From Macrostomum hystrix (Eukaryota; Animalia; Platyhelminthes), in contig CATNEN010000034.1 of the NCBI GenBank assembly GCA_950097015.1, positions 6,138,001 to 6,202,000 on the forward strand: a stretch of DNA of 64,000 bases, in the 5' to 3' direction. Made by a program: the position numbers and the translations under genes. Every line of letters starts with the position of its first letter. Position 1 is the stretch's first letter. Under the pieces are notes generated by a model, which was not told where the DNA came from, ran no database searches, and saw nothing but the letters and a program-made list of their open reading frames with translations. Positions 39,824 to 52,573 of this stretch are shown here, piece after piece.

Positions 39824-40046
39824 CTCGGCAGCGGGTCGGGCTCCGCCGGGCCACCCCGTGACGATGAGGACGGCAACAGAGTCGGTCGAGGCTCCGCGGG
39901 CAGCGGCTCGGGCGTCAGCGGTCCGTCGTTCGGCCGAGTCGGATGGCTTGCAACCTCTGCCACCTCTGTTATTCCCCTGCCGCAGCTCCACGCAGCACTG
40001 TTGACAACACCTGAGCCGACCAAGTCCGTCACTTCATCGAAATTAG
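39824..40046 (+). CDS. SDC: Syndecan exon with glycosaminoglycan attachment sites
   Basis: Acceptor cccccccgcag; [33 protein letters not shown] has five Ser-Gly dipeptides around an acidic patch, followed by a T/S/P-rich stretch. The donor AG|GTCAAT is weak. Confidence 0.7.
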
Positions 40047-43000
40047 GTCAATTTATTGAAATGAGTTTTGAATTTAAAGCGCTACAATTTGTTTAAACAA
40101 AATTCATTGGATTTAAATTTAAAGAAAAGCTGGGGAAATTATCTGATTGATTGCCAGAAGATTCCCAGCGTCCGTTTCAGGGTTAAAATTTGACAGCCAG
40201 AATTTGTCTCTTCTTCTTCAAGTCTGCTCCTTTTTGCTTTTTTCTGCTTTTAAAGCTTTCCTACAACTTTTTTCAATGGTTTGGATAGTAATTTAGCCTG
40301 TCTGGGGTAAGGATTTCCAGTAGATCTAATTTATTGATAGCTGGAGCTTGAGGCAAATCGTACGTTTATTCCTTCAACTAACAAATGGAGCCGATAATTA
40401 GGCTATTTTATTAAACCATGATCAATCTAGACAATCCATGATCAATCTAGACAATCCATGATCAATCTAGACAATCCATGATCAATCTAGACAATCCATG
40501 ATCAATCTAGACAATCCGTGATCAATCTAGACAATCCGTGATCAATCTAGACAATCCATGATCAATCTAGACAATCCATAATCAATCTAGACAATCCGTG
40601 ATCAATCTAGACAATCAATGATCAATCTAGACAATCTATGATCAATCTAGACAATCAATAATCAATCTAGACAATCCATGATCAATCTCGACAATCCATG
40701 ATCAATCTAGACAATCCATGATCAATCTAGACAATCCATGATCAATCTAGACAATCAATAATCAATCTAGACAATCCATGATCAATCTAGACAATCCATG
40801 ATCAATCTAGACAATCCATGATCAATCTAGACAATCCATGATCAATCTAGACAATCCATGATCAATCTAGACAATCAATAATCAATCTAGACAATCAATA
40901 ATCAATCTAGACAATCAATGATCAATCTAGACAATCCATGATCAATCTAGACAATCCGTGATCAATCTAGACAATCCGTGATCAATCTAGACAATCCATG
41001 ATCAATCTAGACAATCCGTGATCAATCTAGACAATCCGTGATCAATCTAGACAATCCATGATCAATCTAGACAATCCGTGATCAATCTAGACAATCCGTG
41101 ATCAATCTAGACAATCCATGATCAATCTAGACAATCCGTGATCAATCTAGACAATCCGTGATCAATCTAGACTATCCATGATCAATCTAGACAATCCATA
41201 ATCAATCTAGACAATCCGTGATCAATCTAGACAATCAATGATCAATCTAGACAATCCATGATCAATCTAGACAATCCATGATCCATCTAGAAAATCCATG
41301 ATCAATCTAGACAATCCATAATCAATCTAGACAATCAATAATCAATCTAGACAATCAATGATCAATCTAGACAATCCATGATCAATCTAGACAATCCATG
41401 ATCAATCTAGACAATCAATAATCAATCTAGACAATCCATGATCAATCTAGACAATCCATGATCAATCTAGACAATCCGTGATCAATCTAGACAATCCGTG
41501 ATCAATCTAGACTATCCATGATCAATCTAGACAATCCATAATCAATCTAGACAATCCGTGATCAATCTAGACAATCAATGATCAATCTAGACAATCCATG
41601 ATCAATCTAGACAATCCATGATCCATCTAGACAATCCATGATCAATCTAGACAATCCATAATCAATCTAGACAATCAATAATCAATCTAGACAATCCATG
41701 ATCAATCTAGACAATCCATGATCAATCTAGACAATCCACGATCAATCTAGACAATCCATAATCAATCTAGACAATCAATAATCAATCTAGACAATCAATG
41801 ATCAATCTAGACAATCCATGATCAATCTAGACAATCCATGATCAATCTAGACAATCCATAATCAATCTAGACAATCCATGATCAATCTAGACAATCAATG
41901 ATCAATCTAGACAATCAATAATCAATCTAGACAATCCATGATCAATCTAGACAATCCACGATCAATCTAGACAATCCATAATCAATCTAGACAATCCATA
42001 ATCAATCTAGACAATCCATGATCAATCTAGACAATCCATGATCAATCTAGACAATCCACGATCAATCTAGACAATCCATAATCAATCTAGACAATCAATA
42101 ATCAATCTAGACAATCAATGATCAATCTAGACAATCCATAATCAATCTAGACAATCCATGATCAATCTAGACAATCAATGATCAATCTAGACAATCAATA
42201 ATCAATCTAGACAATCCATGATCAATCTAGACAATCCACGATCAATCTAGACAATCCATAATCAATCTAGACAATCCATAATCAGTCTAGATTGGATCTT
42301 GTCTAGATTGACAATCCATGAATGACAGTCTAGACAATCCTGAATAAAATCTAAGCAAACATAGGCCAGTCTGCCTCCAACTCATATGATGAAAATCTCG
42401 CTCCTGCAGGCCTGAGAAAGTCGCCAGACTGTACGACTTTGAGCGCCGAGCAGCAGAACTGCTCCTGCTCAGCCAGCGCCAGTTGCGAACTGCTCAAATT
42501 CTACATCCGGCTCGGTTTCCAGTCCGACTGGCGACAACGCATGGCCAACGAAGACAGCGCCGAGTTCCGCGAGGCGGCCGCGCCTATCGAGACTGCTCTG
42601 GCGGAAGCCTTCGCTGCCTACCCTGGCAGGCAGACAGCCAGAGTCATCAGCCTGAGGTATCATTGTGAAATGGGTTGGGTGTCTGTGAAATGGGTTGGGT
42701 GTCTGTGAAATGGGTTGGGTGTCTGTGAAATGGGTTGGGTGTCTGTGAAATGGGTTGGGTGTCTGTGAAATGGGTTGGGTGTCTGTGAAATGGGTTGGGT
42801 GTCTGTGAAATTGGCTGGGTGTCTGTGAAATGGGTTGGGTGTCTGTGAAATGGGTTGGGTGTCTGTGAAATGGGTTGGGTGTCTGTGCAATGGGCTGGGT
42901 GTCTGTGAAATGGGTTGGGTGTCTGTGAAATGGGTTGGGTGTCTGTGAAATGGGTTGGGCGTCTGTGCAATGGGTTGGGTGTCTGTGAAATGGGTTGGGT

Positions 43001-52000: not shown

Positions 52001-52573
52001 GAGTGACGCCAAAAATCCAACATTTCACATTGTCCCCAATCCGAAAATATCCCATCATAACCTCCACACCCTACTTATCCGAAATCCCACGTACCTCATA
52101 ACACACACCTCACATTCCACACACCCCACTTGTACATGTCCCACGTCCCACATCCCACATCCTACACATCCACATATCGAAACTAATCCCTTCGACACTA
52201 ATCCTATCCAGGCATGGCACTATCTGACCCCGTCGTCGCGGTAGCCGTCGCTGGAACCGCCGGACCAAACTACGACGCGACATCTTCGGCGACAGTCTAC
52301 ACTAACTCGCCGATAAGCGTAGACATCGGCGGCTACTCGGAGCTGCTCGCTACGCCCGGCGTCCTGGCTGCCGCGGTGGCCGGCGGCGCCGGTGTCGTTC
52401 TGCTAATCCTGGCGCTGGTGCTGCTATGCGTGCACCGGATACGCAAGGCGGACGAGGGCTCGTATGCGCTCGGCCCGGCTGCTGCAGCTGGCAAAAGCTG
52501 GGGCGGCGGTGGCGCCGCTGCCGGCCTGCACAATGGCTACCGGAGGGCACCCACCAGGGAGTACTATGCGTAG
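39824..52573 (+). CDS. SDC: Syndecan with an ectodomain SEA module (spliced, 368 aa recovered; signal-peptide exon not located)
   Basis: Exons 39824-40046, 42410-42656, 47908-48071, 48627-48697, 51959-51998 and 52212-52573 join in one open frame (internal phases 1,2,1,0,1; 1107 nt) with GT-AG ends. The last exon encodes the TM helix, C1 [12 protein letters not shown] and the PDZ-binding end EYYA, diagnostic of syndecans. Confidence 0.8.
40415..42290. repeat. 20-bp minisatellite, ~93 copies (syndecan intron)
   Basis: Unit atcaatctagacaatccatg. Confidence 0.98.
42410..42656 (+). CDS. SDC: Syndecan exon: 4-Cys motif and N-terminal half of SEA domain
   Basis: Acceptor ctcctgcag, donor AG|[25 protein letters not shown] is followed by [52 protein letters not shown], matching the SEA pattern (L.D..S.EF......IE..L...F...V..F/L). 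Confidence 0.78.
42664..44545. repeat. 20-bp G-rich minisatellite, ~87 copies plus divergent 3' units (syndecan intron)
   Basis: Unit tgtgaaatggg(t/c)tgggtgtc to ~44400, then divergent ctgtgcaagatattgggtgt units. Confidence 0.98.
45169..45342. repeat. (GATA)n microsatellite, ~42 copies
   Basis: Pure tetranucleotide run. Confidence 0.98.
45780..46900. repeat. Degenerate ~15-bp C/A/T-rich satellite, interrupted by a solo LTR
   Basis: Units like aaatccccatttcct. Confidence 0.85.
46324..46539 (+). mobile_element. Solo LTR (216 bp)
   Basis: Begins TGTCAT and ends ATTACA (TG...CA, 5/6 terminal inverted match). It is flanked by a perfect 5-bp direct repeat CCCAT (46319-46323 and 46540-46544), has an internal TATATAAA at 46459-46466, and is unrelated to the satellite it interrupts. 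Confidence 0.78.
47908..48071 (+). CDS. SDC: Syndecan exon: C-terminal half of SEA domain
   Basis: Acceptor tgtcctgtacag, donor G|GTGAGC. The phase-2 join gives [15 protein letters not shown] (SEA GSVVV-type motif), then [44 protein letters not shown]. Confidence 0.8.
48627..48697 (+). CDS. SDC: Syndecan small linker exon
   Basis: Acceptor ttgttttccgcag, donor CGG|GTGAGA; [24 protein letters not shown]; phase 1 in, 0 out. Confidence 0.65.
48845..49105. repeat. 21-bp minisatellite
   Basis: Unit ctgtctaacagctaggcaacc. Confidence 0.93.
49860..49975 (+). mobile_element. Internally deleted SINE family B fragment
   Basis: ggttgtagc head, B-box ggttcgatttccgactcc, and tgcattgcttcagtt core shared with the 61840-62127 copy. 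Confidence 0.55.
50735..51405. repeat. 24-bp purine-rich minisatellite
   Basis: Unit gagactgagaggtaggttg(a/g)gaag. Confidence 0.93.
51959..51998 (+). CDS. SDC: Syndecan 40-nt micro-exon
   Basis: Acceptor aaatttttcag, donor ACG|GTGAGT; [13 protein letters not shown]. Phase 0 in and 1 out is exactly what is needed to link 48697 to 52212. Confidence 0.6.
52212..52573 (+). CDS. SDC: Syndecan terminal exon (TM + cytoplasmic C1-V-C2)
   Basis: Acceptor cctatccag; [44 protein letters not shown]...[12 protein letters not shown]-stop. Confidence 0.93.

What the first reader, a model, noticed from the sequence alone, without database searches (positions are those of the whole stretch)
39824..52573. 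A syndecan carrying a folded SEA domain in its ectodomain
Seen in sequence: six exons splice in one frame into [Ser-Gly/acidic GAG-attachment cluster]-[T/S/P stretch]-[4-Cys motif]-[SEA-like domain, ~100 aa]-[linker]-[TM]-[C1 [12 protein letters not shown]]-[Gly/Ala-rich V]-[EYYA]. Established knowledge: characterized syndecans (vertebrate SDC1-4, fly Sdc, worm SDN-1) have largely unstructured ectodomains without a SEA module. SEA modules occur in perlecan, agrin, enterokinase, MUC1-type mucins and IMPG proteoglycans, and in perlecan the SEA module next to the Ser-Gly sites promotes heparan sulfate priming. Inference: this is a chimeric syndecan/mucin-like proteoglycan that places a perlecan-style GAG-plus-SEA arrangement on a syndecan PDZ-signalling tail. 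I cannot tell from the sequence whether it is lineage-wide or already catalogued.
Basis: partly seen in the sequence, partly recalled or inferred. Interest (0 to 1): 0.85.

Follow-up and report, generated by a model that had tools for sequence, protein, structure and literature searches.

The report
Flatworm syndecan with SEA domain
This is a real, expressed flatworm gene for a syndecan (a cell-surface heparan-sulfate proteoglycan) whose outer part carries a folded, probably self-cleaving SEA domain; the layout is unusual next to textbook syndecans, but it is shared by all four syndecan genes of this genome and was already reported in echinoderms.

Summary
The six exons have AG/GT borders and splice in one frame to 368 residues ending EYYA-stop. 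Spliced transcript contigs from three runs of one study join exons 3-4-5-6 at exactly the predicted borders. This ties the SEA exons to the syndecan tail exon.

The tail passes Pfam Syndecan at 43.6 bits. The SEA call rests on several results:
- A profile that includes the window's exons hits the human ADGRF1 SEA domain at E 3e-6.
- A Macrostomum lignano relative, 38% identical in this domain, models as a beta-alpha-beta-beta-alpha-beta fold. It matches solved SEA domains at Z 13, against 8.3 or less for other folds.
- A paralogue's exon passes Pfam's SEA cut-off.

A Gly-Ser motif sits at the turn where SEA domains cleave themselves.

The novelty is lower than claimed. SEA-bearing syndecans are published for echinoderms (PMC4336488, PMC10381214). 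This genome has four such paralogues, three of them with a thyroglobulin type-1 (TY) domain before the SEA. The window's "4-Cys motif" is a remnant of that domain. Trematode and cestode syndecans keep a diverged TY plus SEA-like module.

The scan noted a paralogue elsewhere in this genome (s1-313512). The signal-peptide exon was not found.

The parts
39824..40046 (+). First located coding exon (not the true first exon). It encodes the Ser-Gly/acidic GAG-attachment cluster (39827-39922: five SG dipeptides around DDED), then a moderately T/S/P-rich linker.
   Evidence: Strong acceptor (pyrimidine tract + CAG) and a phase-1 GT donor, the only donor compatible with exon 2. The SG/DDED cluster is conserved in paralogue C2 and in M. 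lignano P0002.
42410..42656 (+). Exon with the vestigial thyroglobulin type-1 remnant (4 Cys, 42430-42486) and the N-terminal half of the SEA domain (beta1-alpha1-beta2, from 42490).
   Evidence: Pfam SEA partial hit on this exon alone: E 0.03, 14.9 bits, profile positions 13-45. It aligns without gaps to the SEA N-halves of three paralogues and P0002. Its first and last Cys align with the first and last Cys of their TY domains.
47908..48071 (+). Exon with the C-terminal half of the SEA domain (beta3-alpha2-beta4). It starts with the R-G-S-L-I-A-E-V motif. The Gly-Ser codons at 47912-47917 are the predicted autoproteolysis site.
   Evidence: Spliced contigs cover 47906-48070 and join to exon 4. 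It is about 65% identical to M. lignano P0058 over this half. In the model of P0002 the G-S lies in the beta2-beta3 turn. It aligns with the Gly at which the crystallised GPR110 SEA fragment 8hc0_B ends.
48627..48697 (+). 71-nt micro-exon encoding part of the linker between SEA and membrane.
   Evidence: GT..AG joints on both sides in contigs of X2, X3 and X4. It is absent from the M. lignano P0001/P0058 gene models. Skipping exons 4 and 5 together (111 nt) keeps the frame.
51959..51998 (+). 40-nt micro-exon encoding a basic linker segment ([13 protein letters not shown]).
   Evidence: GT..AG joints on both sides in contigs of X2, X3 and X4.
52212..52573 (+). Terminal coding exon: juxtamembrane stretch, TM helix (52358-52432), C1 [13 protein letters not shown] (52433-52471), Gly/Ala-rich V region (52472-52555), C2 REYYA (52556-52570) and the stop codon.
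   Evidence: Pfam Syndecan PF01034: E 2.9e-11, 43.6 bits, cut-off 25.2. All 57 hits in the 1.84-billion-protein library are Syndecan-domain proteins. Coordinates.
52574..52900 (+). Start of the 3' UTR, including a 25-bp tandem repeat at 52588-52784.
   Evidence: Transcript contigs cover 52442-52900 and run past the end of the laid stretch. Repeat.

Best explanation
The locus encodes one of four paralogous syndecans of a free-living flatworm related to Macrostomum.

The protein is a type I membrane heparan-sulfate proteoglycan. From N to C it has: a Ser-Gly/acidic GAG-attachment cluster, a moderately T/S/P-rich linker, a decayed thyroglobulin type-1 remnant, a canonical SEA domain, a short linker from two micro-exons, a TM helix and a syndecan C1-V-C2 tail ending in the PDZ-type ligand EYYA.

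Shown here: the gene structure, the expression of exons 3-6 as one spliced RNA, membership of the Syndecan family, and homology of the ectodomain module to SEA domains.

Inferred:
(a) The SEA domain cleaves itself at Gly-Ser in the beta2-beta3 turn, as in MUC1 and GPR110. The GAG-bearing N-terminal subunit would then stay attached to the membrane stub only non-covalently and could be shed by mechanical force or mild denaturation without a sheddase. I put this at about 50%.
(b) The folded module next to the SG sites favours heparan sulfate priming, as reported for perlecan domain I.
(c) The tail signals through PDZ partners as in other syndecans.
For: Gene model and splicing.

Syndecan tail: 43.6 bits; 57 of 57 hits are Syndecan.

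SEA by sequence:
- The window's joined domain against M. lignano P0002: E 2.4e-23, 38% identity, one gap. Against paralogue C39: 49% identity, no gaps.
- P0002 hits Pfam SEA over profile positions 11-103 at 24.1 bits.
- The paralogue C30 exon alone scores 27.4 bits, above the 26.4 cut-off.
- A profile of the family that includes the window's exons hits the human ADGRF1 SEA domain at E 3e-6.

SEA by fold: the AlphaFold model of P0002:128-340 is beta-alpha-beta-beta-alpha-beta. Its five best VIA-align matches are all SEA domains: TMPRSS6, MUC16 three times, and HAT, at Z 13.2-9.8. The next fold scores 8.3. The ESM Atlas neighbours are MUC16 and MUC1 SEA clusters.

Cleavage site: G-S-[LIV]-[IVL]-A is present in 5 of 5 Macrostomum-type C-terminal halves and sits in the beta2-beta3 turn. 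The crystallised GPR110 SEA fragment 8hc0_B ends at the Gly that aligns with it. GPR110 has GSIVA and is cleaved within its SEA domain (PMC2830182).

Conservation: an orthologue-like M. lignano protein (P0001/P0058) is 54-67% identical.
Against: - The start codon and signal-peptide exon were not found, so the N-terminus is unknown.
- The window's own joined SEA domain could not be scored against Pfam or folded, because no reference exists for a spliced protein. Its exon 2 alone scores only 14.9 bits.
- The fold evidence is from a 38%-identical paralogue-type protein of another species.
- Junctions 40046/42410 and 42656/47908 are not confirmed by reads.
- All transcript evidence is Logan contigs from one study whose library type is not on record. 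I infer RNA from the spliced joints.
- The motif GSLIA differs from the consensus GSVVV. Some SEA domains do not cleave, and nothing here shows cleavage, GAG addition or PDZ binding.
- The tail is somewhat atypical: EYYA instead of [14 protein letters not shown] instead of RMKKKDEGSY, and a long Gly/Ala-rich V region.
Confidence: 0.8

Rival explanations
1. The architecture is as described, but the SEA domain does not cleave itself. It would act only as a rigid, protease-resistant spacer or GAG-priming module, or as a housing for a regulated sheddase site, as in the SEA-like domains of Notch, dystroglycan or EpCAM.
For: The motif is GSLIAEV, not the consensus GSVVV. Trematode and cestode homologues have replaced the G-S turn with a 12-30 residue insert and still keep the domain, so cleavage is not needed for the domain to be retained. 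SEA-like domains can work as proteolytic switches without self-cleavage (PMC6586460).
Against: G-S followed by three aliphatic or small residues is conserved in 5 of 5 Macrostomum-type copies across two species and several paralogues. GPR110's GSIVA, the closest solved match by sequence, is cleaved.
Confidence: 0.4
2. The copy in the window is a decaying paralogue, with its TY domain already lost and its tail drifting, and has little or no function.
For: The core of the TY domain is deleted and only 4 Cys remain. The tail departs from the consensus (EYYA, Gly/Ala-rich V). No start codon was found. The introns are full of minisatellites.
Against: The open frame is intact over six exons with canonical splice sites. 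It is transcribed and correctly spliced in three runs. M. lignano has a counterpart with the same features, including the GS motif, the Gly/Ala-rich V region and REYYA, at 54-67% identity. This indicates that the protein has been preserved since the two species split.
Confidence: 0.07
3. The SEA exons and the syndecan exon belong to two neighbouring genes wrongly joined by the reader.
For: The two upstream junctions lack read support, and the introns are long (2.4-5.2 kb).
Against: Single contigs in X2, X3 and X4 run from exon 3 (SEA C-terminal half) through exons 4 and 5 into the TM/tail exon. The same exon order is found at three other loci and in M. lignano protein PAA65095.1.
Confidence: 0.03
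4. The folded module is a generic ferredoxin-like domain, or the EpCAM-type 'SEA-like' C-domain, rather than a true SEA domain.
For: The window's exon and P0002 fall below Pfam's SEA cut-off. The trematode homologue's model scores similarly against SEA domains (Z 9.8, 9.7) and ribosomal protein S6 (Z 9.0). The domain order TY then SEA is that of EpCAM/Trop2.
Against: For the Macrostomum-type domain, canonical SEA structures stand at Z 13 while Trop2 scores 6.4 and the best other fold 8.3. Sequence profiles hit the ADGRF1 SEA domain at E 3e-6. A paralogue exon passes Pfam's cut-off.
Confidence: 0.05

Closest known systems
SEA-containing syndecans of echinoderms (Ophiocoma wendtii contig 358; Eupentacta fraudatrix and Apostichopus japonicus syndecans)
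   Same: One protein combines Ser/acidic GAG-type regions, a central SEA domain and a C-terminal syndecan TM/cytoplasmic domain (PMC4336488, PMC10381214).
   Different: A different phylum, deuterostome against spiralian. No TY domain or TY remnant is reported there. Whether the SEA sits at the same place, with the same intron, and has a G-S site was not testable here. Common origin or independent acquisition is therefore open.
Macrostomum lignano PAA65095.1 / A0A267EU77 (P0002) and fragments A0A1I8J4U8 / A0A1I8FZ97 (P0001, P0058)
   Same: Same family. P0001/P0058 look like orthologues of the window's gene: 54-67% identical, same GS motif and REYYA end. P0002 has SG cluster, TY, SEA, TM and EFYA, and is the counterpart of the paralogue on contig C2.
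   Different: P0002 has an intact TY domain, while the window's copy has only a 4-Cys remnant. Databases name P0002 as a thyroglobulin type-1 or syndecan domain protein. The SEA is not annotated because it scores 24.1 bits against a cut-off of 26.4.
Classical syndecans (vertebrate SDC1-4, Drosophila Sdc, C. elegans SDN-1)
   Same: Type I topology, N-terminal SG/acidic HS sites, conserved TM, C1 (R-x-[KR]-K-x-D-E-G-S-Y), a variable V region and a C-terminal [EF/EY]YA PDZ ligand. The Pfam Syndecan hit is above cut-off.
   Different: From established knowledge, their ectodomains are regarded as intrinsically disordered and carry no SEA or TY module. They are shed by metalloproteases at juxtamembrane sites.
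Self-cleaving SEA modules of MUC1, MUC16, type II transmembrane serine proteases (TMPRSS6, HAT) and ADGRF1/GPR110
   Same: Same fold (Z 9.8-13.2). The same G-S-aliphatic motif sits in the beta2-beta3 turn. The module lies near the membrane in a heavily glycosylated cell-surface protein.
   Different: Those proteins are mucins, proteases or GPCRs without a syndecan tail. Cleavage here is predicted only.
EpCAM / Trop2
   Same: The ancestral flatworm layout seen in the paralogues is a TY domain directly followed by a SEA-type domain, then TM and a short tail. This is the EpCAM/Trop2 domain order (PMC6586460).
   Different: I found no specific kinship. Trop2 scores Z 6.4 against 13 for canonical SEA. 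The Trop2 TY domain is only a weak profile hit (E 0.021). EpCAM has no GAG sites, no G-S site and no syndecan tail. The window's copy has lost the TY core.
Perlecan domain I
   Same: A cluster of SG heparan-sulfate attachment sites lies N-terminal to a SEA module.
   Different: Perlecan is a secreted basement-membrane proteoglycan, not a membrane protein. The priming role of its SEA is recalled from the literature, not tested here.

Membership tests
Syndecan (PF01034) | Profile match to the TM plus cytoplasmic domain above the curated cut-off | tested here: met
   Exon 6: 43.6 bits, E 2.9e-11, cut-off 25.2. Whole-genome scan: 43.2 bits at this locus.
Syndecan (PF01034) | Conserved C1 motif (R-M-K-K-K-D-E-G-S-Y type) directly after the TM helix | tested here: met
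   [13 protein letters not shown] at 52433-52471. R, K, D, G, S and Y are the invariant columns among the 57 homologues.
Syndecan (PF01034) | C-terminal EFYA-type PDZ ligand (C2) | tested here: met
   The protein ends in REYYA-stop, a Phe-to-Tyr variant. The M. lignano counterpart P0001 has the same ending. PDZ binding itself was not tested.
Syndecan (PF01034) | Ser-Gly GAG-attachment sites with flanking acidic residues in the ectodomain | tested here: met
   Five SG dipeptides around DDED at 39827-39922. Glycanation cannot be tested with these tools.
Syndecan (PF01034) | N-terminal signal peptide (type I membrane protein) | tested here: inconclusive
   No start codon in the six exons. Scans upstream gave only weak candidates: 38789-38887, 37663-37713 and 29809-29868.
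SEA domain (PF01390) | Profile match above the curated cut-off (26.4 bits) | tested here: inconclusive
   The window's exon 2 alone scores 14.9 bits, E 0.03, and covers one third of the profile. The joined domain could not be submitted. Homologue P0002 scores 24.1 bits over positions 11-103. The paralogue C30 half-domain scores 27.4 bits and passes.
SEA domain (PF01390) | beta-alpha-beta-beta-alpha-beta alpha/beta-sandwich fold closest to solved SEA domains | tested here: met
   Tested on homologue P0002 (38% identical, one gap), not on the window's own protein. Z 13.2 for TMPRSS6, 13.1 for MUC16 and 9.8 for HAT, against 8.3 or less for other folds. The Foldseek top five hits are all SEA.
SEA domain (PF01390) | G|S-V-V-V-type autoproteolysis motif in the beta2-beta3 turn (present in the self-cleaving subset) | tested here: met
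   R-G-S-L-I-A-E-V, with the G-S codons at 47912-47917. It aligns with GPR110 G-S-I-V-A and with the C-terminal Gly of crystal fragment 8hc0_B. Only the motif and its position were tested.
SEA domain (PF01390) | Actual self-cleavage into two non-covalently bound subunits | not testable with these tools
   Needs protein expression and SDS-PAGE, with and without a Ser mutant.
Thyroglobulin type-1 domain (PF00086) | Six-Cys domain with the QC...C[WF]CV core | tested here: not met
   There is no Pfam hit on exon 2. Only 4 Cys remain, and the C-[FY]-C-V core and following loop present in paralogues C2, C30, C39 and in P0002 are deleted. I read this as a vestige, not a member.
EpCAM/Trop2 family | Specific similarity of the TY plus C-domain ectodomain and of the EpCAM tail | tested here: not met
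   Trop2 scores Z 6.4 and EpCAM ranks 34th in Foldseek with rmsd 14.5. The tail is syndecan. They share only the domain order.

The most novel reading that the evidence does not exclude
A folded, self-cleaving SEA module, preceded by a TY domain in spiralians, may be an old and largely overlooked part of the bilaterian syndecan ectodomain. It would be retained in flatworms and echinoderms and lost or dissolved into disorder in vertebrates, insects and nematodes. It would give these syndecans a protease-independent, force-triggered way to shed their heparan sulfate chains. The EpCAM/Trop2 TY-SEA-TM layout could then descend from, or have been assembled in parallel with, this arrangement.
Probability: 0.25. 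Interest if true: 0.65.

Novelty: new member of a known kind. Interest (0 to 1): 0.45.

Why it matters
Syndecans are usually described as having unstructured ectodomains that metalloproteases shed. Here a whole lineage, from free-living Macrostomum-type flatworms to flukes and tapeworms in diverged form, builds its syndecans on a folded juxtamembrane module. In the free-living forms the module keeps the Gly-Ser site at which SEA domains cut themselves.

If cleavage occurs, the heparan-sulfate-bearing part is held on the cell only non-covalently. That would change how shedding, co-receptor function and mechanical coupling should be thought about in these animals. Macrostomum is a tractable regeneration and stem-cell model.

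Together with the echinoderm reports, this raises a testable question about the ancestral syndecan ectodomain. For annotation, these SEA domains fall just below Pfam's threshold and are currently unlabelled in the M. lignano entries.

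Tried and rejected
1. Signal-peptide exon. Three scans for ATG, a hydrophobic stretch and a phase-0 GT donor upstream of 39824 gave only weak candidates: an AT-rich one at 38789-38887, 37663-37713, and 29809-29868 about 10 kb upstream.

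2. The window's joined protein or SEA domain was not sent to Pfam, the PDB search, AlphaFold or the Atlas. It was handled only inside scripts. Exon halves and homologues were used instead.

3. Word-based protein searches added little. P0002:215-445 found only itself. A profile of 26 long syndecans found 27 proteins, none with SEA on record. The neighbouring glycosyltransferase ORF found nothing, so the species could not be named. 'Related to Macrostomum' rests on the best hits.

4. Pfam on the 57 nearest syndecan tails showed SEA in only one (P0002) and TY in ten. No non-flatworm hit matched HMMs of the flatworm SEA module. I therefore could not find the echinoderm SEA-syndecans among fetched proteins or compare them.

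5. HMM-to-sequence searches did not link the Macrostomum SEA to the trematode/cestode region (E 0.08-0.7). Only the profile-profile comparison did: 90% probability, E 1.5e-6, 73 columns. The trematode model is a ferredoxin-like sandwich that does not separate SEA (Z 9.8) from ribosomal protein S6 (Z 9.0). That extension is probable, not proven.

6. Specific kinship with EpCAM/Trop2 was rejected.

7. Rfam and ARAGORN found nothing in 39000-54000 or 49600-50200.

8. The mollusc TY-syndecan (Ruditapes, P0084/P0106) has two TY domains and no Pfam SEA hit, and nothing after the TY domains looks like a SEA domain by eye.

Full report
**1. The observation**

Every exon is preceded by AG and, except the last, followed by GT. 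Exons have G+C 0.49-0.67 and introns 0.34-0.47.

- In three runs of one study (X2, X3, X4), single contigs with no mismatches join 48071/48627, 48697/51959 and 51998/52212 with GT..AG ends.
- These contigs carry further sequence upstream of 47906 (204 nt in X3), as expected if exon 2 precedes.
- The library type of these runs is not on record. I infer RNA from the spliced joints.
- Junctions 40046/42410 and 42656/47908 were not covered. They rest on frame, on the lack of any other frame-compatible donor, on the identical intron position in the paralogues, and on collinearity with a M. lignano protein.

The model lacks a start codon and signal peptide. I could not locate that exon.

**2. What the parts are**

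*Tail.* The terminal exon passes Pfam Syndecan at 43.6 bits against a cut-off of 25.2. A phmmer search of 1.84 billion representative proteins gave 57 hits, all carrying the Syndecan domain. The best are from the flatworm Macrostomum lignano.
- P0001/P0058 are fragments, 67% identical in the tail. They have the same Gly/Ala-rich V region and the same REYYA end.
- P0002 (PAA65095.1, 445 aa) reads signal peptide, SG/DDED cluster, thyroglobulin type-1 (TY) domain, SEA, TM, EFYA.

*SEA by sequence.* Exon 2 alone gives only a partial Pfam SEA hit: 14.9 bits, E 0.03. The other evidence is stronger.
- The window's joined domain, assembled in a script, matches P0002 residues 221-331 at E 2.4e-23 with 38% identity and one gap.
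- P0002 hits Pfam SEA across profile positions 11-103 at 24.1 bits.
- A Pfam SEA scan of the window's own genome picks up the N-terminal half-domain exon of a paralogous syndecan at 27.4 bits, above the 26.4 cut-off.
- A profile of the family's SEA region that includes both window exons hits the SEA domain of human ADGRF1/GPR110 in the PDB at E 3e-6.

*SEA by fold.* The AlphaFold model of P0002:128-340 has pLDDT 70-88 over the domain and shows beta-alpha-beta-beta-alpha-beta.
- Foldseek's top five hits are the TMPRSS6 SEA and four MUC16 SEA entries.
- An exhaustive VIA-align search gives Z 13.2, 13.1, 13.1, 12.7 and 9.8 for SEA domains. The next, unrelated fold scores 8.3.
- ESM Atlas neighbours are mucin-16-like and mucin-1 SEA clusters.

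The SEA assignment is therefore sound for the family, and by close homology for the window's copy.

**3. Context changes the picture**

The window's genome is 220 Mb in 42 contigs. It holds four syndecan loci with the same SEA exon pair: C2:985928-1003247, C30:2402629-2418486, C39:6458953-6462794 and the window itself on C34.
- In every copy for which both halves were located (C2, C39 and the window), the SEA domain is split by an intron at the same place, just before the (R/S)-G-S-[LIV]-[IVL]-A-[DE] motif. The N-terminal half of C30 ends at the same point.
- The three other copies have an intact TY domain directly before the SEA.
- In the alignment, the window's 4-Cys motif matches the first and last Cys of that domain, with the C-[FY]-C-V core deleted. 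It is a TY remnant, not a separate motif.

Beyond Macrostomum:
- Syndecans of flukes (Clonorchis, Opisthorchis, Paragonimus, Fasciola, Schistosoma, Dicrocoelium) and tapeworms (Taenia, Hymenolepis) have a TY domain followed by a conserved region that aligns with the SEA. It carries a long insert in place of the G-S turn.
- Profile-profile comparison supports homology at 90% probability, E 1.5e-6.
- The model of the Clonorchis segment has pLDDT 79 and pTM 0.73, and is again beta-alpha-beta-beta-alpha-beta. Its structural matches do not separate SEA (Z 9.8, 9.7) from ribosomal protein S6 (Z 9.0).
- A clam syndecan has two TY domains and no Pfam SEA hit.

TY followed by SEA and TM is the domain order of EpCAM/Trop2 (PMC6586460). 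The flatworm SEA is nevertheless far closer to canonical SEA domains than to Trop2 (Z 13 against 6.4). I read this as a shared layout, not a specific relationship. That is presumably one of the paralogues I examined.

**4. How it most likely works**

*Shown:* one spliced transcript for exons 3-6, the syndecan tail, and a SEA-type ectodomain module.

*Inferred from sequence and from what is known of the families:*
- The SG/acidic cluster carries heparan sulfate.
- The G-S site lies exactly in the beta2-beta3 turn of the model.
- The crystallised GPR110 SEA fragment 8hc0_B ends at the Gly aligned with it, both in structure (model residues 97-153 to chain residues 150-206) and in sequence.
- GPR110 has GSIVA, consistent with the G^SVVV consensus, and is cleaved within its SEA domain. 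Cleaved SEA products re-associate non-covalently (PMC2830182).

I therefore think self-cleavage is about as likely as not. It would leave the GAG-bearing subunit held on the membrane stub non-covalently and would allow shedding without a protease.

The alternative is a non-cleaving structural, priming or sheddase-gating role. The parasitic flatworm homologues support it, because they keep the domain without the G-S turn.

The linker between SEA and TM comes from two micro-exons of 71 and 40 nt. Skipping both keeps the frame and reproduces the M. lignano P0058 join, so a shorter isoform is possible.

**5. Known or new**

In the searchable literature, 15 papers contain both 'syndecan' and 'SEA domain'. 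Only the two I had already read place both in one protein.
- A 2023 review states that SEA is reliably detected in holothurian syndecans and below threshold in sea stars (PMC10381214).

No paper was found on flatworm syndecans with SEA or TY. The M. lignano entries are labelled only as syndecan or thyroglobulin type-1 domain proteins.

The architecture is thus a known, if obscure, kind, and this gene is a new member in a new phylum. Three points appear to be new: the family-wide TY-SEA module in flatworms, the TY remnant, and the conserved G-S site.

**6. Verdict**

Interest is moderate, 0.45.

**Limits**
- The 5' exon is missing.
- Two junctions are unconfirmed.
- The fold was tested on a homologue only.
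- All transcript evidence comes from one study's contigs.
- No biochemical claim was tested.

Noticed in passing
window 40416-42291 and 42664-44525: Two unrelated 20-bp minisatellites flank exon 2. Each has about 93 copies at 94-95% identity and spans about 1.87 kb. The second starts only 8 nt after the exon's donor site and leaves all three minus-strand frames open for more than 630 codons. The near-equal copy numbers are unexplained. Further arrays lie at 48849-49110 (21 bp), 50735-51407 (24 bp) and in the 3' UTR at 52588-52784 (25 bp).
   Followed up: partly
window 49972-50033 (intron 4): A core of about 60 nt belongs to a dispersed repeat. The genome gave 1199 first-look candidates, and the 40 scored were 93-100% identical. 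It reaches depths of 800-2300 in the transcript contigs, with many different flanks. Just upstream (49878-49908) is a tRNA T-arm-like GGTTCGATTTCC...CCA stretch, which suggests a tRNA-derived SINE. ARAGORN and Rfam found nothing.
   Followed up: partly
window 34169-35401 (+): An intronless 410-aa ORF with a Gly_transf_sug (DXD) glycosyltransferase domain, E 3.7e-11, lies 4.4 kb upstream of the syndecan exons. The word-based protein search found no homologue. Whether its position next to a proteoglycan gene means anything is unknown.
   Followed up: partly
L011:1501-2466 (G000:C2, upstream of the tail exon of the C2 syndecan paralogue): The reading frame of the tail exon stays open upstream through about 25 copies of a 10-residue (30-nt) repeat (VQSLSQILRL), followed by a GSVTLPDPQI repeat. 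This is probably the array that scan note s1-384990 describes as amplified splice acceptors.
   Followed up: no
P0084 / P0106 (Ruditapes philippinarum XP_060592090.1): A clam protein has two thyroglobulin type-1 domains on a syndecan tail. TY-bearing syndecans are therefore not restricted to flatworms.
   Followed up: partly
G000:C10:1176013-1176123, C39:16092677-16092784, C7:10027329-10027445, C30:4115248-4115379, C38:24521293-24521424: Five further loci match only the TM/C1 part of the Syndecan profile, at 25-31 bits. Some sit in open frames of 300-900 aa. They are probably other type I membrane proteins with a syndecan/neurexin-like juxtamembrane motif.
   Followed up: no
window 51801-51969: One X3 contig runs unspliced from intron 4 into exon 5. 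This suggests pre-mRNA or intron retention in the libraries.
   Followed up: no
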